64,000 bases of DNA from Convolutriloba macropyga. Taxonomy: Eukaryota. The position numbers and the translations under genes are program-made. This document shows, one piece after another, positions 39,400 through 51,996 of the stretch. The DNA lies in NCBI RefSeq assembly GCF_964194025.1, contig NC_134474.1:13330001-13394000 (forward strand), in the 5' to 3' direction. The first letter of the stretch is position 1. Each line of letters opens with the position of its first letter. The notes under the pieces were generated by a model. The model worked only from the letters and a program-made list of their open reading frames with translations. It searched no databases and was not told the origin of the DNA.

Positions 39400-41510
39400 C
39401 ATTTTACGAACTACTCGTCAACATAAGACAAGCTGCAGAGCAAACTTATAGAACGGTGTTTTTCAATCGTTGATCTAATTTTGTCTTTGGAAGAAAAAGT
39501 ATCTGCTCTTTGATATTCCAATATATTGTAAAGTATCTTTATTTAAGCTTGTTTTGAAAATCAGCATTAGTGATTTAGGGCAATTTATTTAGAACTTTGC
39601 TTTTCTTTCGATGGGGATCGCAAGCTTTGTTTGTTTGGAGCTTTCTCAGATTTTTCGTATCTTTATTTCATCAGTTTCAAATCAAACGAAGCGTTTTTTT
39701 TCATAGATTTATTGTTGAATTTAGTGACCTTTTAGGAATACGCTTGAAAAAAATGCTGAATAATTTGTTTTGACCTAGATCGTCATTATTTTTTTGCTCG
39801 TTATATGTCAAGGTTTCGGGGTATCTTACGGACTTATGTAACAATTTTAAGTATTTTCTGACGATCAGAGAACCTATCTCGAAAAAATGGCTGTCGAACT
39901 CGGATTGTCTACATTAAGCGCAATGCTCTCACTTTTTTCAGTCCGCTTTAGTTTAATTTGCAGGCTGAGATCAGAACTTATTACAATTTTCTTCTCTGGG
40001 TTGAAGTGATTTTCATGAGTTGAGAAGTCCCTTTTGTGAAACAAAAAGAAAGATTGGATCTTTGAAAGCTTTTTATAGAGATATTGTGTTTAAGAGGTTC
40101 TTCGAGCCATTTATATCAATTTCTCTTAAGTTCATCAACACTGCTGTAGCAGTATGGGTTAAAAAGATGTTCTTCGATGTAACTCTTTAAATTTTCCTAA
40201 TTCACTTTTTGAATATATATCTGTGCTGTTTACATCTTTTCCTGATTTCTGTTTCCAGTTTGAGAGTGCCCGTAAAAACTGTGTGGTCAGGTTTAAAAGT
40301 TTTGATGAACTCATTGCTTTCACATTTGTTGATGATTGCAAATACAGAAATTTGTTAAGAAGACATTGAGTTTGTTGTAATCTTTCTTATTTGGGACTTC
40401 AAGGAAATTTAACGCCTAATAGTTTTCATTGATCTTACTTTCATATTCGAAGTTAGAGCTTTATGTTTAACATTTAGTGCTTTTGAAGACTATGTCTCCA
40501 GTAAACGTAAATATTTGACAGTTTTTGTTATTGGCGCTTTCCTGGTTTTTTATATGAGGGAAGTCGTTGATTAGTCACTGCATCTAAAAACCTGTTTTTT
40601 GGAGGTTTTTAAAGACTCAATACAATCGATGCATTCTTTGGCTTAACCATGATCGCAACATAGTCAATTTTCAGCTTAAGATCTATTCTTTCATGACGTA
40701 ACTTTGTTACCATCACAAGTACACCTCCATGTTTTGATTTATAATCAAGTGTTTTTCTAACCTTTTGTTGAATCGTATAATATTTATGAATTTCTCTTTC
40801 GGTACATCATCTCTTAGCCCTGTCTCCGTTGAAAAAAAATCTATTTTTTTGTTCAACTGCTCTAGAGTTCGCGAGGATTGCTCGTCTTTTCGCATCAAGT
40901 AAACTTCCTACCTTGAACGTTAATTGTTTCATCATAATTTTTAGTCATTCATTTTAGTGGTTCGCGTTTTGATCAACAAGGGTAGTTTCTGTATTGATGC
41001 AATTTTTGACAATTTTTTGCTGCATTTTGAAGCTTCTGAATCTTGTTTGGTTGTTCTGATGCCATTATTTATTATACTACGACGTTTTTGCAGTAATTCA
41101 TTTTCAGTTTTTCGTTCATCGGAATTGATTTTTCCACTAATGAAGACAGGGATTTTGTAGTCATCCATTTTCCTCAGTCATAGGAATTTTCATCTGTTGG
41201 CATAATCGCCATCAATTTTGGCTATGAAGGTGCGATCTTTTCCTTCACTAAATTTAACATGTTTTTCAAAATCAGTTACGTTACCAATTAAACTAAATTG
41301 CTTTGTGATGAAATTTATTTGTTTCAGATCGTTTTCATATCTTTCACGGCTGTTTTTGAAATTCAGTTCAGGAATGCATCTGAACCTTATTAAATGCTCT
41401 CCAACGAAGTTTGTAGCAATTATATTAGTCCTTTCGGTATTTTTTATGCGATTTTTTGCTTAAAGGTTCGTCATTTTTTGAGATGCTAATTTTTGAGGTC
41501 TCGTAATTTC
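39400..41510 (-). mobile_element. Heavily decayed CR1/L2-like LINE (ORF1 C-terminus, endonuclease, partial RT)
   Basis: 'PVFISGKINSDERKTENELLQKRRSII' (ORF1 CTD) and 'TGDIVF...NVFLTN' (APE remnant). Confidence 0.55.
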
Positions 41511-41514
41511 ATCC

Positions 41515-43100
41515 TGACATTCTAGAAAAATACTTGGAAGGTCATTCAAAAAGATGAAAAACAGAAACGGGTCAAGTACGGAACGTTGTGGTACTCCACT
41601 AGTGACCAAAATCGGATCAGAAAAATAACCATCAAGATTTACAATTTGGGAACGGTTCTCCAGATAGGAGAAGAATAGGGTACAGAGCTCCTCCTCGAAG
41701 CCAAAAAGGTTCAGTTTGGCGATTAGATTTTCACGCGGAACTTTGTCAAAGGCCATTTCATAGTCCAAGTAAATCGTAAAAAGGGTATGGGATTTATTGC
41801 TGTACAATGTTTCCATATAGTCGGTTAATTGCAGAACTGCATTTTTTCGTGACTGGAAGCCGAACTGTTTGGGATGGATTTGGTGTTTAAATAATTCATA
41901 AAGATAATTGAAAAGTAAGCGTTCAAAAATCAAAGAGACTATTGGAAGTAAACTGATATGGCGGTAGTTTTCGATGTTGGATTTGAAAAGCTTTTTGTGC
42001 AAGGGCCTAACATAGGCTACTTTCTAAATAGCGGAAAAAGATCGAGATTCAGCAATTGAGTGAAAGAGATAAGATAGCAAATCTGCAGACAGATGTGGAG
42101 TTAACTAAAGGAGAGAACAAGGCAAGAAATCATTCGTCACGTAAGTTGCTGTTTTTGTGTTCAATATCTCATCTAAGAACAAATCAGGTCTTATGGATGA
42201 ACTGAAAAACTTGATTTTGATTGACTCGGCTGGAGCAAGTGGATTGCGGACATATGAGTTTGCGCTGATTTTTTTTAAAGAAATTGTTGAAGCAGTTTGC
42301 GATAGCTATAGAATCTTCAAGCGCTTTGTGTTTACACAACATTTGTTTGGGATAAGATGAAGTTTTCAGGCAATGTAGTAAATCAAAACAATCGGGTAGA
42401 CATGTGGTCATTGAACCGTTAAAAAAGCAAACCTTATCCATTTCGAAAAACGATTCAAACTCCGAGGCAAGTCGAAATATTTGAGATCAGTTGCTTTTTG
42501 TTGGGTTCCGGGCAGCTCGTTTACGCACCGTATTCAATTGGTTTAAAGTGTGCATAGTTAACAAGCTATAATAGAATGGATTTGCTTTGCGTTTTGATCG
42601 CTTACGCTGGAAGTTAGTTCGGATGCTGTTACACAGAAAATTATAGAAAGTTGTTACGTCGCTGCTAATCGACGAGGAATCAAAATTGAAATAAGTCCAA
42701 GATTCAACAAATTTATTGAGATTTGTTGCCTTGTAGATTTGTTTTTGCTTGCGGACAATGGTAGATATACGCACATAAAAACAAGAGCTTCAGACGAATT
42801 GTCTACCGCGAAAGCAGTTCAAAAGTCACTTTTGAGAAGTTTAAGTTGTCGCGTTACTAAGTCATTTGAAGTCTTACGTAGAACAGCAAATCCCCCATGT
42901 TGACCCTTGAGTTTGTCAACTCTCGTACTAGCTCATACTGACCAAAAAGTTTGAAGTTATCACTCATTGTGGAGGAATCGAGCCAGGTTTCTGTCAGGAT
43001 TGCTGTTTCTATTTCGTTGAGTATGAGGTAATTCAGTAAAGCTGATTGTTTGTCCATAGATTTAAATTATTGAACAGTAAGTAGTAGTATGCGTGACCTC
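41515..43100 (-). pseudogene. LINE ORF2 (APE endonuclease plus RT) remnant
   Basis: 'ILTETWL', 'NYRHISLLPIVSLIFERL', 'QFGFQ', 'YLDYEMAFDKVP', 'TSGVPQRSVLDPFLFFIFLNDL'. Confidence 0.9.
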
Positions 43101-43129
43101 AAAGATTGTCTTTCGTTTGGCACAGTTGT

Positions 43130-43906
43130 GGTTACCGAATTTGCCGATGATTTCAGTTTCTCAGACAAGAGAGGTCGTCCAAATCAGCAGAGTCAATCTG
43201 CATGCCGTTATGAAATAACTTAAGATCTCTGAGTCTGAGCAAGTCCCGATCTATGCCAAGCTGAATCAACTCAAATCGTTTGTGAAGCAGATCTTTTTCT
43301 GTGAGCCGATCTTTGCAGCAGAGTTTTGGTATAGCGAGTGACAGTTGGATAAAGTTATACGGCGACCGTAGATCGAGGCTAGCTGGATTTTCACTGGGCG
43401 AGGCCTAACTTATGCCTCCGGTTTGCGTTTGCCAAGGCGGACAATGTTATTTATTTTTTCAGGAACAATTTTGAGCTTATCGCAAAAAGTTTGTACATTA
43501 GAATCATCTTGGGAGGATCTGACCTCGGCAATGTTGAATAGAACATTAGTCTCTTCAGCTTTGATGTCATAATCCCGCTCATCGAGGGTTCTTTTGACGG
43601 CATCGGCTTAGTTGGTGTGTTGACTGGAGCTCAGGCCTTGATGATTCAGGGCAACCGTTTCAATATTCACAAGTTTCCTTTCAATGAATTTGACTGCTTA
43701 AGCAGTTTCTGAGATGATTCCACTAAATTTTTCCATTTTTTTACAGTCATTCAATTGCGACAGGGTTTCACGAAGCAAACATTCCAGGGTACTCTCTTTA
43801 GCTTTTGATGTGAAAATCGATAATTCATTTGGGGCAGCGGCGAGGAGTTCGCTAATTGTGGGGTAATAGTCTTACTAGAGGTTGAACGGTTACGGTGTTC
43901 AGTCAT
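43130..43906 (-). pseudogene. LINE ORF1 remnant (coiled coil plus RRM-like/CTD)
   Basis: ATG at 43906; 'IVRLGKRKP..RPRPVKIQL', 'EKDLLHKRFELIQLGIDRDLLRLRDLKLF'. Confidence 0.7.
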
Positions 43907-43933
43907 TTTTAAAATGGGAAGGAAGAAGAAAAA

Positions 43934-44597
43934 TCACCAAACCAGCAAGTACCCTGTGGCACCTACTAGAGGAGACCTGCGGATACTTACTTTGAATGTG
44001 CAGTTACAGTGTTTGTAGAGACACTCGAACACCTGAGCGTTGTTTTCAATCGCTGCACCTTTATCGTACATCACCTTGTTCTTCATCACCTTCTTCTTCT
44101 TGTTCTTGATTGAATGCCTCGCGACCTTCGGCACTTAGGTGGTAACCGTTGTTACCCAAATGGTCCTCGCAGTAGATTTTTTCAGACACTCCCCGATACT
44201 TCCATCGACTTGACTGAGCAACCTTTCGAATTTCAGCGTTCACCGTGGATGCACGTGCGCGGGCGTCTCCGCGATGAGGAATACCAAGTACAAATACCGA
44301 ACTCGCGAGGTCACACAAGGAATCGGCAAGAAGAGCTAGTTCTTTGGCTATGTCTAAAGCTGGTACTGTTAAAGGTGTCCGTCGGTCGTAAACGTCGTTT
44401 CCACCAACGAAAAGTACAATAGTTTTATATTGGTTCTTTCGAGGATAGAAATTAGCTGTAACGTTTCCAATACGGGCTCCGGGGATAGATAAAATATTGA
44501 ATTTAGAAAATTGCAGATCTTTTGCTTAAGAGTCAGCTATCAAAAGGTTGTTAGAAGATGTATCTTTGAAGGTGTGAGATCTTTTCACAGTAGTCAT
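43934..44597 (-). pseudogene. SGNH hydrolase/esterase ORF (SGNH-B)
   Basis: Blocks I 'LLIADS*', II 'SIPGARI', III 'LFVGGND', V 'NGYH'; C-terminal 'ECLYKHCNC'. One stop and one frameshift. Confidence 0.85.
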
Positions 44598-44859
44598 AGG
44601 GGATAACCACGGCTATCTCAGTAAATCAATAATTATCTGAAACTCTATTTATCAATATTTATCTGAAAGGTATTTATCTGAAAGGTATTATCTTCAAGCA
44701 TGATAATACCTTAATCGCTGTCCAGGGATCTATTGTATACGTCTTAACTGGGATTACTTTGACGACCGAAATAGGGGGATTAAGGGATATAGAAATGAAC
44801 GGCGAAGGGCAGCAAGAAGGACCGTGGCCGCCGCACGGGGCCTATGGCTTTCTAACCAG

Positions 44860-45309
44860 AGAAAGAACCAACGACAACTGCTTTGCCGGGGACGCTCAGA
44901 ATCTTTGGGATGGCTTCTGCTGGCACTCTTGTTCGAATACAGGACCTTGTTTTTATTTGGCGATGCGAGGTTTCCTTTCCCTTTATCGTTAATGTGCACG
45001 TAGTAGTTACCAAACAACTGGGCATTCGACCAAACTGCGTAACTTATGCCGCGAAAATCCCAACTGTACTTGTCTGATTTCTCGCTTAATCGCTTGTTTA
45101 GTGTAAATTAGCGAAACAATTCGTGGTCCTGATAATTAGCTTGAAACGTTTCAAGTTCATCTTTCGGGGGCCAACGTGGGGGGATGCCAAAGACAAACAC
45201 CTTTTCAATAATTTTAAATGTTTTTTTGCTAAGTCGGCTATCATCGACAACTTCCTGTATGGTCAATTTGGAAGGGAGGTAACTGTTGTACAGGTCGTTT
45301 CCTCTAATT
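44860..45309 (-). pseudogene. SGNH-A, C-terminal part
   Basis: 'IRGNDLY', 'KVFVFGIPPR', 'WDFRGIS', 'YVHIN..G..NL..KNKVLY..HP'. Confidence 0.8.
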
Positions 45310-45332
45310 GTTGTGATAAACTTATTAAATAG
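45304..45332 (+). other. Spliced-leader-like 5' terminal motif (ctaattgttgtgataaacttattaaatag)
   Basis: 22/22 identity (45310-45331) to the reverse complement of 50305-50326; ends in AG. The SL identity is an inference. Confidence 0.55.
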
Positions 45333-45521
45333 AGTCAATATTAGCCAACGCCCCGAATGACTCCGAACAAATTTACAAACCGTGTGATTTCAGATCATTT
45401 GAAGCTAGGAACTATATCAATAAGACCACCGGTACCAGTTATTGGTTCCAACGGTTTATATCTATCTTTCCTTCAAGCCCCGTCCGTTCCTAGCTTGGAC
45501 GGGTGAATAAAAGAAGACTGA

Positions 45522-46140
45522 ATGCGATTTCATATCTTTAAAACTTCCAAGACCAGAAACATAATTTTTGCAGATTCCCAATTGAAACATCTCCGATTTC
45601 CAAATTTTAACATTCTATCACTTCCAGGAGCGCAAATTCGACATCTATCAGAAATCTTACCGGAAAAAAGGTAATACGACAATATAGTTTTATTCATTGG
45701 TGGAAACGACATCTTCACCGGCTCAACACCATCGAACAAAGAACCAGAAGTAACATGCCTTACTAGCCGAAGAACTTTTGCCCCTTGCGACAGAGAAAGT
45801 ATTTGTAATTGGCATCCCATCACGAGGAAGCGACAGTGCGAGTAAAAAGAAGGCCAAAGCAACAAACGAATTCATCAACAAATTACAAAAAAAGAGTAAA
45901 AAGTGGGAATACAGAGGCATCACTGAAGAAGTTTATTCCCCGGAATTACACTTGAGTAACGACGCCGTCCACCTCAACGGGAAGGCCTTTGGAGGAATCT
46001 GCTCCAAATTAAAGAACAAAATCCTACGCACAACTTTCAGCGCAAACATAGACAAAAAAGACCATCCAAAGGAATACCACTGTGCTGGGAACTGCGAGTG
46101 TGGTTCGTACAACCCCACGATTTACCAACGGTACCAGTAA
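45522..46140 (+). pseudogene. SGNH hydrolase/esterase ORF (SGNH-C)
   Basis: 'IIFADSQ', 'SLPGAQI', 'LFIGGND', 'NDAVHL' (DxxH), tail 'HPKEYHCAGNCECG'. One stop and one frameshift. Confidence 0.88.
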
Positions 46141-46228
46141 TTGGTTCCAAAGGTAAATAAGTTTTTCTTTCCCCAATTTTCCACCCGTTTAAACTTCGAA
46201 TTTTTCTATAAATCACACACACAACGGA

Positions 46229-47085
46229 ATGAGTTCCAAAATATCTGGTAAACAAATTCAATTAGAGGGTATGAGTATCCAATGTGAAACCTGTTCTAAG
46301 CCAATTGGTAAAAAAGAAGCAATCTTCCGTTGCGTATGCTCTGCCACAATCATGCACATGTCCCCAAGCTGCACAAAACTTAGCATCGAAATAATAAATG
46401 CACTTCAACAGGTCAATCAAAACGTTCTGCTTCTATGCAACGCTTGCGTACAGCAGAACAAACGTGATGTGATTCTGGACATCAAAAAAAGTCCACCACA
46501 AAAACAAAACAATCTAGAAATCAAATAGGACATTCAAACCACAATCAAAGAAACTATTAGCAGCAAAATAAATGAAATTGGGAATAAACTGCCAACAGCT
46601 AACAACAACATTGAAAAAACCCCACAGTAAAGGCTAGAACTGCAAATGACCTGGCAATCAGAATAAGAGGAATAGATGAAAGTAAGAAAGAAACCGCTCG
46701 TGAAAGAGCTGAAGAAGATATACAAGAAATACAGTCAATCCTCAAATTCCTCAAGCTAGACTGCCAAATTACGGACTGCAGGCGCATGGGTGCTTTCAAA
46801 GATGGAAGGCATCGTACCATTCTTGCAACCATGCCATGCATGTATGACAAACGCATCTTACTACTCTCACTCTCAAGATTGAAACGATATAGCAAAACAG
46901 TGTACATTAGCAAAGGCTACTCCCTACAAGAAGAAGAGCACTTGAATAACTGTCTGAAAAAGCGAAAAGACTTAATAGACGCAGGTTTCCCCAGAAAAAA
47001 CTTGAAAGTAATGAATCTGACATTATACGAAAAACAAGATGAAAATTGGGTCGAATACTTAGACAATGCTCGGTATTCCACCTGA
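46229..47085 (+). pseudogene. LINE ORF1 with N-terminal PHD finger
   Basis: 'CETC...CVC....H...C...LLCNAC' PHD-like pattern, coiled coil, 'RRMGAFKDGRHRTIL', 'LKKRKDLIDAG'; stops and frameshifts around 46490-46680. Confidence 0.85.
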
Positions 47086-47089
47086 CTCG

Positions 47090-50000
47090 CAAAAAATACA
47101 GACAAAAAACAAGAGGTATCATTTCTAACGTTTAATTTACATAGTTTCATTGATCTACCACGTAGATTTGCATTTGCAAACGCTATTGTCCCCTACAATC
47201 CAGACATTCTTTGCCTAACCGAGACATGGCTCACAGAAGAAGTTCCAAACGAAGCACTCTTTCTCAAAAGTTTTGTCATTCACAGAAATGACACAACTTC
47301 AAAATGCGGTGTCTCAAAACATGGAGGTGTTCTAGTGGCGGTAAAAGACAACATTCAATCTAAACAATTGTTTGTTAAGAACACATGTGAGGGTTGCCTA
47401 ATCGTAAAAATTAACACTAAAAATGACTCAATCCTATTGTCTGTATTTACAACCCACCTAAAAGCAGCCCATACAGATGGTGCAAGCAGAAGTTTGAAGA
47501 CCTCACACAAACGCTAAAGTTTTTAGAGAAGAAAACAAAGCCAAAATCAATCATCATTACAGGAGATCTCAACTTCTCAACCACTGACTGGAAACAAATG
47601 TCGTCACCAGATGAACTTGACAACACCTGGCTCAACTATTTCGTAGATGAAAATTTTGAACAAATGCTAAACTTCACTGACCTTTTGGGGTACAAAAAAC
47701 GGCTAGATGTCTTCCTAACAAACGAACCACAATTTTAGATCAATTCGAAAATCGAAGCCAAAATTAGTAATAACTATGCCCTCAACAACAAATAATGCTC
47801 AGATCATTACGCTTACATAACACGATACGAATGCAACTACGATCAAGCGACCGATCGCAGCAGACCAAAATACGCTTACAAAAGAATATATTGGATTAAA
47901 TTCAACTGCAACATCTCAAAAAACCCATTTAACCCCTATTGTTACAGTAACGTTGACGAACTTCTTAAACAATGATATGAATGGTTCAATCGCCTTTTCG
48001 ATCAAAAGGTCCCAAAAGTAACTCAGCACAGATCACAGCTCCCCCCGTAGGTGTCAAAATGCACATCCCATGAAATGAAAAAACTATCAACTTTGAAACG
48101 AAAAGCAATTGCCCATCCAAGTCCTGCTCCAAACACACTAAACAAAATAGATTGTCTCGAAGAAAAAGTCAACACACTTTGTAAAAACGATCAAGTCATC
48201 TATGAAAGCAAGATTTTCGCAACACGTCAATTCAGCTTTATTCAAAAATATTTACGATCAATTAAAAAAGTCACACCATTCCAAAGCGAGATGCACCTAA
48301 ATGAACAAACTGCTAACACCAATGAAGAGAAAGCCGAGTTGTTCAATTTATTTTTCCAGAGTGTTTTCAATTCAAAAACATCAAATATTGAGAACCAGTT
48401 CAATTTTGAAGAAAAAGATCCTAATCACTTTGATATTTCAGAAAAAGAAATTGAAAGTATACTAAACAAACTTGATACTAGTAAAGCCAACGGCCCTGAT
48501 GATATAAGTAACCTGTTTTTGAAAAATCTATCTAAAACATTAAGCAGATCCTTACTTCTACTTTTTCAAACATTCATTAACAAAGGTAAATTTCCAGCAT
48601 ATTGGAAACAAAGTGACATAACACCAATACACAAAGAGGGCGATAAAGCCACAATCAAAATGTATAGACCAATTATTTGCCTATGTTGCCTCCCAAAAGT
48701 TTTCGAGAAACTTATTTTCAACAAACTCTATGAGCACGTTAAAGGAACACTTCACGATTCCCATTTTTGTTTTCGGCCTCAACGTTAAGCAATTATTCAA
48801 ATGTTATGCTTTCTAGACCAACTGTACAAAGAAGTCGACTCAATTGAACATGATGAACTTTTCGTTTTCTACCTAGATTTCCAGAAAGCGTTTGATACAG
48901 TACCCCACCACCGCGTTAATGCAAAACTGTCGGAATCAGGGATCGGGGGAAAAGCGCTCAGATTAATAGCCAACTACTGTGACGACAGAAAACAACGTGT
49001 TCGCATTGGAACCTCAACGTCGAGCCTTCGTGACGTCACTAGCGGCGTACCGCAAGGTTCAATCCTGGGGCCACTACTTTTTCTCGTCTACATAAATAAT
49101 TTACCACAAAAAATCGAATACAGTCAAACCTACGGTTATGCAGATGATTAAAAATTGCTCTCTAATAACAAACATGAACTTCAAACTGATCTCCAGAAAT
49201 TAAATGAATGGTGCAATAACAACGAAATGCGCCTCCATGAAAACAAATGCAAGATCCTCTGTTTCAAGAAAAACTCACTCTTTACAATAAAAAATGAAAT
49301 TGTCAACATCTCGTCTCATCAAAAGATCTCGGAATACAAGTTTGTGATAACCTCACTTGGCATCAAAACGCAAGCACACGAGCCTCCAAAATTCTTTAAG
49401 CACTTTGGTACCTCGAAGAAATCTTCACCACAGAACTCTCCCTCAAGTTAAATTAAACGCATACACGGGTTACATTGTACCAATTATATCCTACGCCTGC
49501 CAAGTGTGGTATCCTTCTTAATGCGATCTAGTACTCATCGAAAGAATCCAAAAAAGTGCGACGAAATGGATAATAGGTTCTTCTCTCACATATAAGGAGC
49601 GTTTAGTCAAACTGAAAATTCTACCTCTGCCTTTTTACTTCGAACTTCACAGCTTATTACTACTATGTGATATCATAAACAATAAATACAACATTGCCAT
49701 AGAAAAGTTTATACATTTCAACAACAATAATCGGACGAGACAAGGCGCGAAATGTGAAATCAAACTTACGAAAAAACGATTATTCAAAAGCGACGAAAAT
49801 TTCTGGTCGAGAACAGCCTATCTCTATAATATTGTCAACAAACAGACAGACCTTACAGACAACAAAAATATAAAATATCGGATCAGCGACATTTATTGGA
49901 AATTCTTTTTTAGAAGTTTTAACGAAATTGACATGTGCACTTGGAGAATTTGCTGCCTGTGCAAAAACTGTAACCCCATTTCGAAAATATCTCATTTATA
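47090..50000 (+). pseudogene. LINE ORF2 (APE endonuclease plus RT)
   Basis: 'FLTFN', 'DILCLTETWL', 'TGDLN', 'SDH', 'GPDDI', 'YLDFQKAFDTVPH', 'SGVPQGSILGPLLFLVYINNL', 'YADD', C-terminal 'WRICCLCKNC'. Several stops. Confidence 0.93.
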
Positions 50001-50064
50001 ACGATCAACAAGGGTGCTTCAACCCGTGCATTGCAGAAGCCTGAACTACTAATACTACTACTAC

Positions 50065-50238
50065 AATTAGCAAAGCAATCCGGTCGTACTGGACAGGAGC
50101 TGGAAGAAATTGATGGACGTTTTCTACTCTGGCAGCAGGCAGCTATAGGACATTGATTTCAGGGTATTAGATGTGCTTCACTTAAGAATCTCCAATTAGG
50201 AGACCTTTGTTGTTAGATGATTTGAAGGTATATCTCAT
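50065..50238 (-). pseudogene. SGNH-A, N-terminal part
   Basis: 'MRYTFKSSNNKGLLIGDS*VKHI*YPEINVL*LPAARVENVHQFLPAPVQYDRIALLI'; joins 'RGND' at 45305 in frame. Confidence 0.8.
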
Positions 50239-50303
50239 ATCACATACACGCAGGTCTCCAAAAAACTTCGATTGAAGGTACTCCACACCACGCGTTTGAA
50301 GAC

Positions 50304-50330
50304 ATATTTAATAAGTTTATCACAACCATT
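50304..50330 (-). other. Spliced-leader-like 5' terminal motif of the older LINE
   Basis: Reverse complement reads 'aatggttgtgataaacttattaaatat', ~70-90 nt upstream of the SGNH-A ATG. Confidence 0.5.
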
Positions 50331-50703
50331 GACTTCAGCGGAGTCACGTAACCCAGCTTAAAACAAAATTGGCAGGTTTGAATATGTGGAAAGCCCAGGG
50401 AAGTGACCTGAGACTGGATACTATTAAGTTTTCTATGAGTCGACAGAAAATCGATAATTTTTGGTTGCTCTAAACTTGAAAAAGGACCAAATTGCTTCCT
50501 TTAAAATTTTTGCCAGCGTTCTGTATAAAACCCTTAGTCGAGTTCCACGTGAAATCTCTTCAATTGGAGCATGCCTCCATTGTTTTTTTGAAGTTCTTGC
50601 ATAGTAACTGTCAGTTTGAGTTTTTTTTATCGAGATGACCAGATTTAACGTTTACTTTTGGTAACGCGTAAATATAGTTCGGCAACGCCCTCGATTTGCT
50701 TTG

Positions 50704-50807
50704 AGAAAAGTTGGGTCTTTCTAATTATACCCTCCCCCCCCCCCCCCCCCCAATATAGTCCCCCCATTAAACGGGGGGACGCTATAATGTGAAAGACCCC
50801 CTTTTCT
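50704..50807. repeat. Short palindromic MITE-like element
   Basis: 'agaaaag..gggtctttc..attata' and 'tataat..gaaagaccc..cttttct' arms around an inner 'gtcccccc/ggggggac' stem and a poly-C run. Confidence 0.55.
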
Positions 50808-50928: not shown

Positions 50929-51996
50929 ATGAATAGGGAGTTTCAGCCAACCTGCGATGGCTATGGCAATAACCATCGTTATAGTAACGGAAAGTTTTTC
51001 AATCCCTGGTCTCGTGAAGCTAAAGGCCTGGGTTTCACAGGCATTACATGGGAATTTCTGAAGTATATGCGCATGCATAAGAATCCCGACACATTGGCAC
51101 CAGGTGAAGAAAATTTATCCGAACAAGAATTTTTGGACAAACGGCTTCCAGTCTTAAATTTTGATGGCAGAACTGCAGAGAATGCCAAGGCGCCAGATAA
51201 AGGAATGCGATGCGTATGGCTTGGTCATGCATCGTGCTTAGTTCAGTTTGACAATATATCAATTTTGGCTGATCCCCTATTCAGCGACCACTGTGCTCCG
51301 TTTCAGTTTAAAACAATGCCTAAAAGGCTTCGAAAAGTTCCATGTACAGTTGAGGAGTTGCCACCTATTGATATTGTGGTTATAAGTCATAACCATTATG
51401 ACCATTTGGACTATCATTCCGTCAAAGCATTAAACGAATCACAGGGTTCCAGAGTTAGTTGGTTTGTCGGCCTTGGTTTGAAAAAATGGTTTAAAGATAT
51501 GGGAATTGAAAACGTTTATGAACTGGATTGGTGGGAGGAGCATAAACTTAACGAAAATATCACGGTAGTTTTCACTCCTACGCAACATTGGTCAAAGCGA
51601 ACGCCGTTTGATACCAACTGGACTTTGTGGGGAAGCTGGTTGGTTAGAAGTGCTAATTATAAATTTTTATTTCTCGGCGATACAGGATACTGTCAAACGT
51701 TTAAAACAATCGGTGATAAGTTTGGACCAATAGACTTAGCCGCTATCCCGATCGGAGCTTATCACCCTAGAAAGTTTCTAGAATTACAGCACGTAGATCC
51801 AAAGCAAGCGGTGCAAATACACAAGGACGTGCAAGCAAAGAAGAGTATTGGAATACACTGGGGAACTTTTACTCTGGGTCGCGAAGCCCATATGCAACCA
51901 AAGGATGATCTAGCTAGAGAAGTTAGAGCAGCTAATTTGACAAATGAAGATTTCTTCACTACTAATATCGGCGAATGTGTTCATTTATTTACGTAA
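50929..51996 (+). CDS. NAPEPLD: N-acyl-phosphatidylethanolamine-hydrolysing phospholipase D (metallo-beta-lactamase fold)
   Basis: Intact 355-aa ORF with 'FFNPW', 'WLGHAS', 'DPLFS', 'SHNHYDHLD' (HxHxDH), 'ELDWW', 'QHWSKR', 'LWGSW', 'GDTGY', 'PIGAY', 'HVDP', 'IHWGTF'. The frame is open from 50848, so the true start may be upstream. Confidence 0.93.
   Translation: MNREFQPTCDGYGNNHRYSNGKFFNPWSREAKGLGFTGITWEFLKYMRMHKNPDTLAPGEENLSEQEFLDKRLPVLNFDGRTAENAKAPDKGMRCVWLGHASCLVQFDNISILADPLFSDHCAPFQFKTMPKRLRKVPCTVEELPPIDIVVISHNHYDHLDYHSVKALNESQGSRVSWFVGLGLKKWFKDMGIENVYELDWWEEHKLNENITVVFTPTQHWSKRTPFDTNWTLWGSWLVRSANYKFLFLGDTGYCQTFKTIGDKFGPIDLAAIPIGAYHPRKFLELQHVDPKQAVQIHKDVQAKKSIGIHWGTFTLGREAHMQPKDDLAREVRAANLTNEDFFTTNIGECVHLFT

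What the first reader, a model, noticed from the sequence alone, without database searches (positions are those of the whole stretch)
45304..50330. Two divergent LINEs start with the same spliced-leader-like sequence: candidate SL-capped retrotransposons
Seen: the 5' boundary of the plus LINE, fixed independently by the split SGNH-A gene, begins GTTGTGATAAACTTATTAAATA(G) at 45310. The older minus-strand LINE begins with the identical 22-mer (50326-50305), extending to AAT(T/G) upstream. Identity stops abruptly after it (agtcaat.. vs tgtcttc..), and the UTRs and proteins are otherwise highly diverged. Known: a short invariant 5' exon ending in AG with unrelated downstream sequence is the signature of SL trans-splicing, and relict SLs mark retroposed mRNAs in dinoflagellates. 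I recall acoel transcript leaders of similar sequence but cannot verify that here. Inference: these LINEs retrotranspose from SL-trans-spliced RNA and need no internal promoter; the leader's own terminal AG could serve as the acceptor for the next round from host read-through transcripts. This differs from NeSL/SLACS elements, which insert into SL genes.
Basis: partly seen in the sequence, partly recalled or inferred. Interest (0 to 1): 0.88.

Follow-up and report, generated by a model that had tools for sequence, protein, structure and literature searches.

The report
Spliced leader heads acoel LINE retrotransposons
The shared 22-base start of the two elements is this acoel worm's own trans-spliced mRNA leader, so LINE jumping genes here were spliced like host messages and copied back into DNA with the leader attached, at roughly 1,700 places in the genome.

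Summary
The 22-mer lies at 45310-45331 (+) and 50326-50305 (-), with none expected by chance. It is the 3' two-thirds of the published Symsagittifera roscoffensis spliced leader (SL).

This genome holds about 1,400 true SL RNA genes. They have a GTAAGT donor, lie in tandem arrays and are linked to 5S rRNA. About 1,700 further SL copies are dispersed. In a sample of 30 dispersed copies:
- upstream flanks are unrelated;
- none continues into the SL intron;
- at least 25, probably all, head LINE-type coding sequence, from about 20 families whose RT cores are 30-60% identical.

Within families the leader is joined at different positions. Longer variants carry TTYYAG exactly where shorter ones are joined. 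Five of seven tandem SL-SL pairs have a second leader lacking its first AG. This indicates repeated SL trans-splicing of LINE RNA followed by full-length retrotransposition.

One correction: the minus-strand SL-headed element is a ~0.9-kb unit encoding only an esterase ORF1, not the neighbouring RT-bearing LINE.

Promoter independence and reuse of the leader's terminal AG remain inferred. Similar SL-TE fusions were noted briefly in parasitic flatworms, and SL-bearing TE transcripts in Hydra. This scan reached the same conclusion elsewhere in this genome (s1-214592).

The parts
45304..45332 (+). DNA copy of the spliced leader (SL nt 4-32) at the 5' end of the plus LINE. The first SL bases are replaced by, or overlap, target sequence (genomic CCTCTAATT versus canonical AGCCTAATT).
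   Evidence: Identical to the published SL and to the exon of the SL RNA genes.
45333..45359 (+). 27-nt stretch between the leader and the family's usual junction (ACTCCGAAC at 45360). It is unique to this copy, so here the leader was joined further upstream than in sister copies.
   Evidence: Sister copies align only from query position 24-34. 16 sister copies have the leader joined directly at or beside 45360. Alignment with L059.
45388..45393 (+). TTTCAG 3' splice-site-like motif inside the 5' UTR. In other copies of this family the leader is joined directly to 45394.
   Evidence: 5 BLAST matches start at query position 61. Contigs in three DNA runs join 45330 to 45392 (table 5).
45304..50064 (+). 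Plus-strand LINE, a decayed copy. ORF1 holds an SGNH esterase (45522-46140) and a Cys-rich finger (46229-46528). Endonuclease remnants lie at about 47200-47900, RT at 48051-49521 and the ORF2 C-terminus runs to about 49997. The 3' tail is an (ACT/TAC)n simple repeat at 50045-50064.
   Evidence: (RVT_1 6.9e-14).
50065..50068 (+). AATT, repeated at 45306-45309. Either a 4-bp target-site duplication or microhomology with the leader's CTAATT.
   Evidence: the reading frame of the split esterase is restored with a single AATT.
50304..50330 (-). DNA copy of the spliced leader at the 5' end of minus element M1. The 5' part has diverged (AATG for AATT) and the last base is T instead of G.
   Evidence: 5 of 14 related copies align into the leader in the same register.
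44702..50330 (-). M1: SL-headed unit of about 0.93 kb, plus the nested plus LINE. It is an ORF1-only LINE derivative, comparable to HAL1.
   Evidence: Sister copies on C6 are 880 bp long, and their alignments stop at 44708-44702.
41460..44674 (-). M2: a separate minus-strand LINE (second esterase at 44590-44061, endonuclease near 43057, RT at 42170-41535). No canonical leader at its 5' end.
   Evidence: (family matches start at query 327-374).

Best explanation
The shared motif is the host spliced leader (SL). LINE transcripts in this acoel are processed like host pre-mRNAs. The 32-nt SL exon from the SL RNA is trans-spliced onto an AG acceptor in the LINE 5' region. The capped, SL-headed RNA is translated. 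The LINE's own reverse transcriptase then copies it to its very first base, so each new insertion carries a DNA copy of the leader at its 5' end.

Shown:
- the motif is identical to the SL exon;
- it stops at the exon/donor boundary;
- it heads many unrelated LINE families;
- junction positions vary within families and coincide with AG acceptors;
- leader-bearing copies were spliced again.

Inferred: transcription comes from outside the element (read-through), so no internal promoter is needed. The DNA copy of the leader, which ends in AG, would itself serve as a portable 3' splice site that regenerates the same 5' end each round.
For: Identity of the motif:
- It matches the published SL of S. 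roscoffensis.
- SL RNA genes carry AGCCTAATT + the 22-mer + G, followed by GTAAGT. They lie in tandem arrays on C9, linked to 5S rRNA (116 bits). About 1,393 copies exist, and the RNA folds as an SL RNA (z = -5.1).

Genome-wide distribution:
- 3,118 genomic hits against 5 for the reversed control, so about 1,700 copies are not SL genes.
- In 30 sampled dispersed copies, the 9 nt upstream read AGCCTAATT in 20 (one mismatch in 5 more), and the next base is G in 27.
- Their flanks are unrelated (median 28% identity), none resembles the SL-gene promoter, and none continues with GTAAGT.

Association with LINEs:
- 14 of 20 copies with 6.3 kb of downstream sequence have a same-strand RT 2-3.7 kb away.
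- Long open EN+RT ORF2s of 877-982 aa are present.
- The remaining copies share LINE ORF1/ORF2 homologues.
- There are 22 distinct 5' UTR clusters, and RT cores are only 30-60% identical.

Alternative acceptors:
- L045 has the leader joined exactly where L049, L052 and L053 have ..TGTTTCAG.
- Of 54 copies with the AGATGAGCC start, 13 are joined directly. The other 41 carry an insert, a 6-nt TTYYAG in all but one and ending in AG in 38.
- The plus-LINE family uses at least three junctions: 45333, 45360 and 45394, the last directly after TTTCAG.

Repeated rounds:
- 5 of 7 tandem leader pairs read ..AAATAG|CCTAATTG.., so the second leader lacks exactly its first AG. None keeps it.
- Relict leaders also occur in two plus-family copies.

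RNA: run X6, which behaves like RNA, holds hundreds of contigs with the leader followed by unrelated sequences.
Against: - No run labelled as RNA was available.
- In X6 the plus-LINE body is almost uncovered.
- Because genomic copies already contain the leader, SL-LINE reads would not by themselves prove fresh splicing.
- Target-site duplications abutting the leader were no more frequent than in shifted controls. Apart from the window's split ORF, the 5' boundary therefore rests on flank divergence.
- Not every LINE has the leader: M2 does not.
- A few master copies per family could account for many of the shared junctions.
- Reuse of the terminal AG leaves no trace in DNA and is untested.
Confidence: 0.88

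Rival explanations
1. The leader was acquired once, or rarely, by a master copy of each family and is since inherited as ordinary element DNA. Transcription starts at or near its first base, with no ongoing trans-splicing.
For: Copies of a subfamily share the same junction, e.g. 7 ACTCC-type and 6 ATTCT-type copies. Genomic copies encode the leader, so inheritance alone would reproduce it.
Against: Several junction positions occur within single families, each at an AG acceptor. Relict leaders show that leader-bearing copies were transcribed from upstream and spliced again. The same perfect 32 nt occurs on about 20 families with RT cores 30-60% identical.
Confidence: 0.08
2. Chimeras made by reverse-transcriptase template switching from the LINE RNA 5' end onto SL RNA or onto other SL-bearing mRNAs, like the U6-L1 chimeras of mammals.
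For: Short duplicated leader 5' fragments lie just upstream of some full leaders (L009, L010, L019), which suggests some end-jumping by the RT.
Against: Only the exon part of the SL RNA is present, never the intron (0 of 30). Junctions fall at TTYYAG acceptors rather than at random positions. A second leader lacks exactly its first AG.
Confidence: 0.04
3. A conserved LINE terminal or promoter motif unrelated to the host leader.
For: None beyond its position at element 5' ends.
Against: It is identical to the published host SL and to the exon of about 1,400 SL RNA genes, and it ends at their splice donor. It is invariant across families that share nothing else.
Confidence: 0.01
4. NeSL/SLACS-like elements that insert specifically into SL RNA genes and are therefore flanked by leader sequence.
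For: One CRE-type element inside a leader copy was reported elsewhere in this genome (scan note s1-200734) and judged a one-off.
Against: Upstream flanks of 30 dispersed copies are unrelated to each other and to the SL-gene promoter (maximum 47% identity). The sites lie far from the C9 arrays. The ORF2 endonuclease is APE-type, not restriction-like.
Confidence: 0.01

Closest known systems
Leader-bearing mobile-element loci in parasitic flatworms (Calvelo et al. 2025, PMC12582326; Boroni et al. 2018, PMC5832876)
   Same: Genomic leader sequences fused to LINE/LTR elements. The authors interpret them as integration of retrotransposon transcripts that had received the SL.
   Different: There it is a side remark on discarded loci: 597 loci over 24 species with 'partial leader sequences', or 6 loci in S. 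mansoni, possibly assembly artefacts. Here there are about 1,700 mostly full-length leaders in one acoel genome, on about 20 LINE families, with alternative-acceptor and relict-leader evidence.
SL on transposable-element transcripts in Hydra (PMC12220107)
   Same: About 30% of TE Iso-Seq reads carry the host SL, so TEs use the host trans-splicing machinery.
   Different: That is RNA-level evidence only. The passages found for the splicing terms do not mention leader copies at genomic LINE 5' ends.
Relict spliced leaders on dinoflagellate retrogenes (e.g. PMC5585692, PMC12014239)
   Same: The leader is encoded in DNA at the 5' end of retrocopies. Tandem relict leaders truncated at an AG record repeated rounds of transcription, trans-splicing and retroposition.
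   Different: The cargo there is host genes. Here 0 of 30 sampled copies is an ordinary host gene and all are LINE-type.
NeSL-1 / SLACS / CZAR (LINEs that target SL genes)
   Same: LINE sequence is found next to leader sequence.
   Different: Those insert into SL RNA genes using a restriction-like endonuclease. Here the leader is part of the retrotransposed RNA, the insertions are dispersed, and the endonuclease is APE-type.
Ribozyme-processed LINE 5' ends (HDV-like in R2 and L1Tc, PMC3185411; twister variants in S. mansoni, PMC8501958)
   Same: Functionally analogous: a way to cut a defined LINE 5' end out of a host co-transcript without an element-owned promoter.
   Different: Self-cleavage leaves an uncapped 5' end. 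SL trans-splicing would donate a capped host leader.
HAL1 (ORF1-only L1 derivative of mammals)
   Same: M1 is a short multi-copy unit that keeps only a LINE-type ORF1.
   Different: M1's ORF1 is an SGNH esterase of the CR1/L2 type, and the unit is SL-headed.

Membership tests
SL trans-splicing substrate | Leader identical to the exon of the host SL RNA gene | tested here: met
   The 32 nt are identical to the exon of the arrayed SL RNA genes and to the published SL.
SL trans-splicing substrate | Leader ends exactly at the SL RNA splice donor; no intron sequence is carried over | tested here: met
   0 of 30 dispersed copies continue with GTAAGT. The base after the 22-mer is G in 27 of 30.
SL trans-splicing substrate | Junction lies at a 3' splice-site AG visible in longer variants | tested here: met
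   TGTTTCAG precedes the L045 junction. TTYYAG is present in 38 of 41 long forms. TTTCAG at 45388-45393.
SL trans-splicing substrate | RNA molecules with a freshly added leader on LINE transcripts | tested here: inconclusive
   No run was labelled RNA. The RNA-like run X6 shows the leader on many RNAs but hardly covers this LINE.
APE-type LINE (non-LTR retrotransposon) | Reverse transcriptase of the LINE type | tested here: met
   RVT_1 at 6.9e-14 in the window copy and 3e-34 in sister SL-headed copies.
APE-type LINE (non-LTR retrotransposon) | Apurinic-type endonuclease N-terminal to the RT | tested here: met
   Exo_endo_phos domains in L036, L054, L055 and L025. Only weak remnants in the window copy.
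APE-type LINE (non-LTR retrotransposon) | No LTRs, simple-repeat 3' tail, target-site duplication | tested here: inconclusive
   An (ACT)n tail ends at 50064 and the host ORF rejoins exactly. The duplication is only 4 bp (AATT) and overlaps the leader. In other loci duplications did not exceed controls.
NeSL/SLACS/CZAR | Insertion inside an SL RNA gene, so that flanks are SL-gene sequence | tested here: not met
   Flanks are unrelated and lack the SL-gene promoter and intron.
NeSL/SLACS/CZAR | Restriction-enzyme-like endonuclease | tested here: not met
   The endonuclease is APE-type.
snRNA-LINE template-switch chimeras (U6-L1 type) | Whole small RNA fused at variable positions of a truncated LINE | tested here: not met
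   Only the exon is present, and junctions fall at defined acceptors.
Relict-leader retrocopies (dinoflagellate type) | Tandem leaders, the downstream one truncated at an AG | tested here: met
   5 of 7 tandem pairs read AAATAG|CCTAATTG, as does L033.
Relict-leader retrocopies (dinoflagellate type) | Cargo is ordinary host genes | tested here: not met
   0 of 30 sampled copies.

The most novel reading that the evidence does not exclude
SL trans-splicing is the regular, promoter-independent way in which a whole community of LINE families is expressed. Under this reading, the DNA copy of the leader at each element's 5' end is a portable 3' splice site. Any host read-through transcript would then be converted into a capped, full-length, translatable LINE mRNA with a self-renewing 5' end. 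That would be a new solution to the LINE 5'-end problem, alongside internal promoters and 5' ribozymes.
Probability: 0.4. Interest if true: 0.8.

Novelty: new variant of a known kind. Interest (0 to 1): 0.6.

Why it matters
LINEs lose everything upstream of their transcription start each time they copy themselves. The known remedies are internal promoters or self-cleaving 5' ribozymes. Here many unrelated LINE families instead carry the host's spliced leader, and they have been re-spliced over several generations. This suggests that host trans-splicing can supply the cap and a defined 5' end.

It also has practical consequences. About half of the leader-like loci in this genome are LINE heads rather than SL RNA genes. 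This matters for SL-gene annotation, for counts of trans-spliced genes (leader-bearing RNA-seq reads can come from LINE copies), and for models of how SL trans-splicing and transposons shape each other in early-branching bilaterians.

Tried and rejected
- **Terminal inverted repeats of a DNA transposon.** The 26-nt inverted pair lies 5 kb apart. Rejected because the content is one plus-strand LINE nested in a minus-strand unit.
- **One minus LINE running from 50326 to the RT at 42000.** Rejected because genomic relatives cover either side of 44702/44674 but never both.
- **A leader on the RT-bearing minus LINE M2.** Its GATAAATATTGATAAATAG is family sequence, and no copy with a canonical leader at that junction exists.
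- **Target-site duplications next to the leader in 20 loci.** Matches of 10 nt or more occurred in 5 of 20 loci against 21% of shifted controls. Several of them are head-to-tail tandems, so this gives no support.
- **SL-RNA-like Sm site in LINE 5' UTRs (L010 type).** No similarity to the real SL RNA intron.
- **RNA evidence.** Both run searches returned only unlabelled runs. The single read-laying run gave contigs only. The X6 joints from the leader to 50735 (a poly-C tract) and to 48337 have 22-nt sides and no AG, and are not interpreted.
- **More sampling.** The sample is therefore the first 30 exact matches on one chromosome.


Full report
**Observation.** The 22-mer GTTGTGATAAACTTATTAAATA occurs twice in the window, at 45310-45331 on the plus strand and 50305-50326 on the minus strand. 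None is expected in shuffles. With the preceding AAT(T/G) it forms a 26-nt inverted pair. Downstream of the motif the two copies share nothing.

**What the motif is.** A full-text search found the sequence in one work, the genome paper of the acoel Symsagittifera roscoffensis. That paper gives GCCTAATTGTTGTGATAAACTTATTAAATAGA as the spliced leader (SL) present on 30.2% of genes (PMC9911081 and its preprint). It says nothing about LINEs.

In the window's own genome (1.18 Gb) the 22-mer, with up to 2 mismatches, has 3,118 hits against 5 for the reversed control. True SL RNA genes are present:
- A conserved upstream region is followed by AGCCTAATT, the 22-mer and G, then a consensus donor GTAAGT.
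- They are repeated every 1.1-1.8 kb in arrays on contig C9, with 5S rRNA genes on the opposite strand.
- About 1,393 copies match the leader 3' half plus the intron start.
- The first 100 nt fold into a stem-loop that holds the donor, a U-rich single strand and a second stem-loop (z = -5.1).

This leaves roughly 1,700 leader copies that are not SL genes.

**Window anatomy.** The plus LINE runs from the leader copy (45304-45332) to an (ACT)n tail ending at 50064.
- Its ORF1 has an SGNH esterase and a Cys-rich finger. Endonuclease remnants, an RT (RVT_1, 6.9e-14) and an ORF2 C-terminus follow.
- It interrupts a minus-strand esterase reading frame. That frame rejoins as YDRIALLI|RGNDLY when 45310-50064 is removed, leaving one AATT. 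This fixes the 5' boundary within the leader.
- The minus-strand leader copy (50330-50304) heads that same esterase unit, here called M1.
- Genomic relatives of M1 are 880 bp long and their alignments stop at 44708-44702.
- A different, younger family (90-96% identity) begins at 44674-44647 and contains the minus-strand endonuclease and RT.

M1 is an SL-headed, ORF1-only unit. M2 is an RT-bearing LINE for which no canonical leader could be found. Five of 14 M1 relatives align into the leader in the same register.

**Genome-wide sample.** The sample is the first 30 exact hits on chromosome C1.
- The nine bases upstream of the 22-mer read AGCCTAATT in 20 copies, with one mismatch in 5 more. The next base is G in 27.
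- The 40 nt further upstream are unrelated between loci (median 28% identity; only two duplicated pairs). None resembles the SL-gene promoter.
- None continues with the SL intron.
- For 20 of these sites I had 6.3 kb of downstream sequence. 14 have a same-strand LINE RT 2-3.7 kb from the leader. Some have long open endonuclease+RT frames of 877-982 aa.
- The others share ORF1 or ORF2 homologues with these copies, carry an APE endonuclease or an L1-type ORF1 domain, or (5 loci) carry an SGNH-esterase-like ORF that the Atlas groups with LINE proteins.
- None is an ordinary host gene.
- The 5' UTRs fall into 22 clusters. The most conserved ~100 aa of the RT are only 30-60% identical between families.

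A leader that is perfect on families this far apart, and identical to the host exon, cannot be an inherited LINE motif.

**Evidence that splicing added the leader, repeatedly.**
1. Only the exon is present, ending at the donor.
2. Junction positions differ within families and coincide with acceptors.
   - L045 is joined exactly where L049, L052 and L053 have a 40-nt extension ending in TGTTTCAG.
   - Of 54 copies that start with AGATGAGCC, 13 are joined directly. The other 41 carry an insert, a 6-nt TTYYAG in all but one and ending in AG in 38.
   - In the plus-LINE family, 16 copies are joined at or beside 45360. At least five are joined at 45394, directly after TTTCAG. The window copy alone is joined 27 nt further upstream.
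3. Of seven tandem leader pairs, five read AAATAG|CCTAATTG, so the downstream leader lacks exactly its first AG. None retains it (L033). Two plus-family copies carry relict partial leaders.

Such relicts require transcription that began upstream of an existing leader copy, a new trans-splicing event and a new retrotransposition.

**RNA data.** No run labelled RNA was served. One unlabelled run (X6, 79 Mb of contigs) behaves like a transcriptome:
- Its depth is 23,834 over the leader and near zero over the LINE body, which is multi-copy in the DNA runs. Depth is 1,553 over the neighbouring metallo-beta-lactamase-fold gene.
- It holds hundreds of contigs that consist of the leader followed by unrelated sequences.

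This agrees with the published SL, but it does not show fresh splicing of LINE RNA.

**Mechanism.**
- Shown: LINE RNAs carrying the host leader at their first base were reverse transcribed in full, many times and in many families.
- Inferred: these elements are transcribed by read-through from outside, and the leader copy's terminal AG (or the TTYYAG just behind it) is the acceptor for the next round.
- The persistence and diversification of 'long-form' lineages fits reuse of that AG, because their only upstream AG in DNA is the leader's own. A few master loci could give the same picture.

**Rivals.** Four alternatives fail on the tests above:
- a DNA-inherited leader without ongoing splicing;
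- template switching onto SL RNA;
- a LINE-owned motif;
- NeSL-like targeting of SL genes.

**Novelty.** Three precedents exist:
- Leader sequences fused to LINE/LTR loci were noted in passing in parasitic flatworms and interpreted the same way (PMC12582326, PMC5832876).
- Hydra TE transcripts carry the SL (PMC12220107).
- Dinoflagellate retrogenes carry relict leaders.

This scan also reached the same conclusion on another piece of this genome (s1-214592). The additions here are the scale in an acoel, the restriction to LINEs, the alternative-acceptor series and AG-truncated relict leaders, and the corrected anatomy of this window.

**Limits.**
- Target-site duplications did not exceed controls.
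- Clade names for the LINE families were not established.
- The species is inferred from the identity of the leader.

Noticed in passing
L005, L009, L015, L019, L020, L021, L027 (first 20-26 nt after the leader); 54 exact genomic copies: A 20-nt motif, AGATGAGCCAGCGAGGCATG (reads MSQRGM), follows the leader in three LINE families. Their sequences are unrelated from the next base on, and their RT cores are only about 60% identical. It occurs nowhere else in the fetched loci. It could be a shared ORF1 start, a splicing or translation element, or a swapped 5' module. Unexplained.
   Followed up: partly
L033:320-395 (+), L039:6235-6310 (-), L034:2866-2941 (-): In some LINE families the first ~16 nt after the leader are its reverse complement. 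This gives a 13-15 bp hairpin (z = -3.9 and -3.5 in two of them) that mimics stem I of the SL RNA and is followed by a TTTCAG/TTTTAG. The window's plus LINE and L055 lack it.
   Followed up: partly
window 50929-51996 (+): An intronless 355-aa ORF with a metallo-beta-lactamase fold (Lactamase_B_2, 6e-38). In the RNA-like run X6 it is deeply covered, and a contig ends at 50938, just after GAATAG at 50931-50936. It is probably an SL-accepting host gene.
   Followed up: partly
window 50010-50708: A 699-nt X6 contig is colinear with the genome across the M1 leader copy and into its flank. If X6 is RNA, this is read-through transcription over a genomic leader copy; the strand is unknown (table 8).
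   Followed up: no
30 dispersed leader copies, position -1 relative to AGCC: The base before AGCC is T in 22 of 30 copies, and position -5 is A in 19 of 30. The SL gene also has TTTT before AGCC. Either the SL RNA starts 1-2 nt further upstream than published, or the endonuclease prefers such sites.
   Followed up: partly
L055, L052/L053, L037/L038; C6:62281963-62284953; C5:57128311-57131029: Head-to-tail tandems of LINE copies, each with its own leader. The flank upstream of the leader is the 3' end of the same family in L055 and L053. M1 relatives lie 2.1 kb apart and M2 relatives about 1.2 kb apart.
   Followed up: partly
L009, L010, L019, L021, L002 (20-40 nt upstream of the full leader): Partial copies of the leader's 5' part lie just upstream of complete leaders. 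Possible causes are end-jumping by the reverse transcriptase or insertion into older leader copies.
   Followed up: no
G000 contig C9, 23.14-23.78 Mb and 62.05-62.12 Mb; also C8:54177849 and C2:54173649: SL RNA genes come in array-specific variants: intron GTAAGTATTAAC versus GTAAGTATCAAC, and exon variants GATAAAATT and AAACAG. Some copies have the donor changed to GTTAAG. They are interleaved with 5S rRNA genes.
   Followed up: partly
window 50713-50799: A 20-nt poly-C run (50733-50752) lies inside a 27-nt inverted repeat (50713-50739 / 50773-50799), between M1 and the beta-lactamase-fold gene.
   Followed up: no
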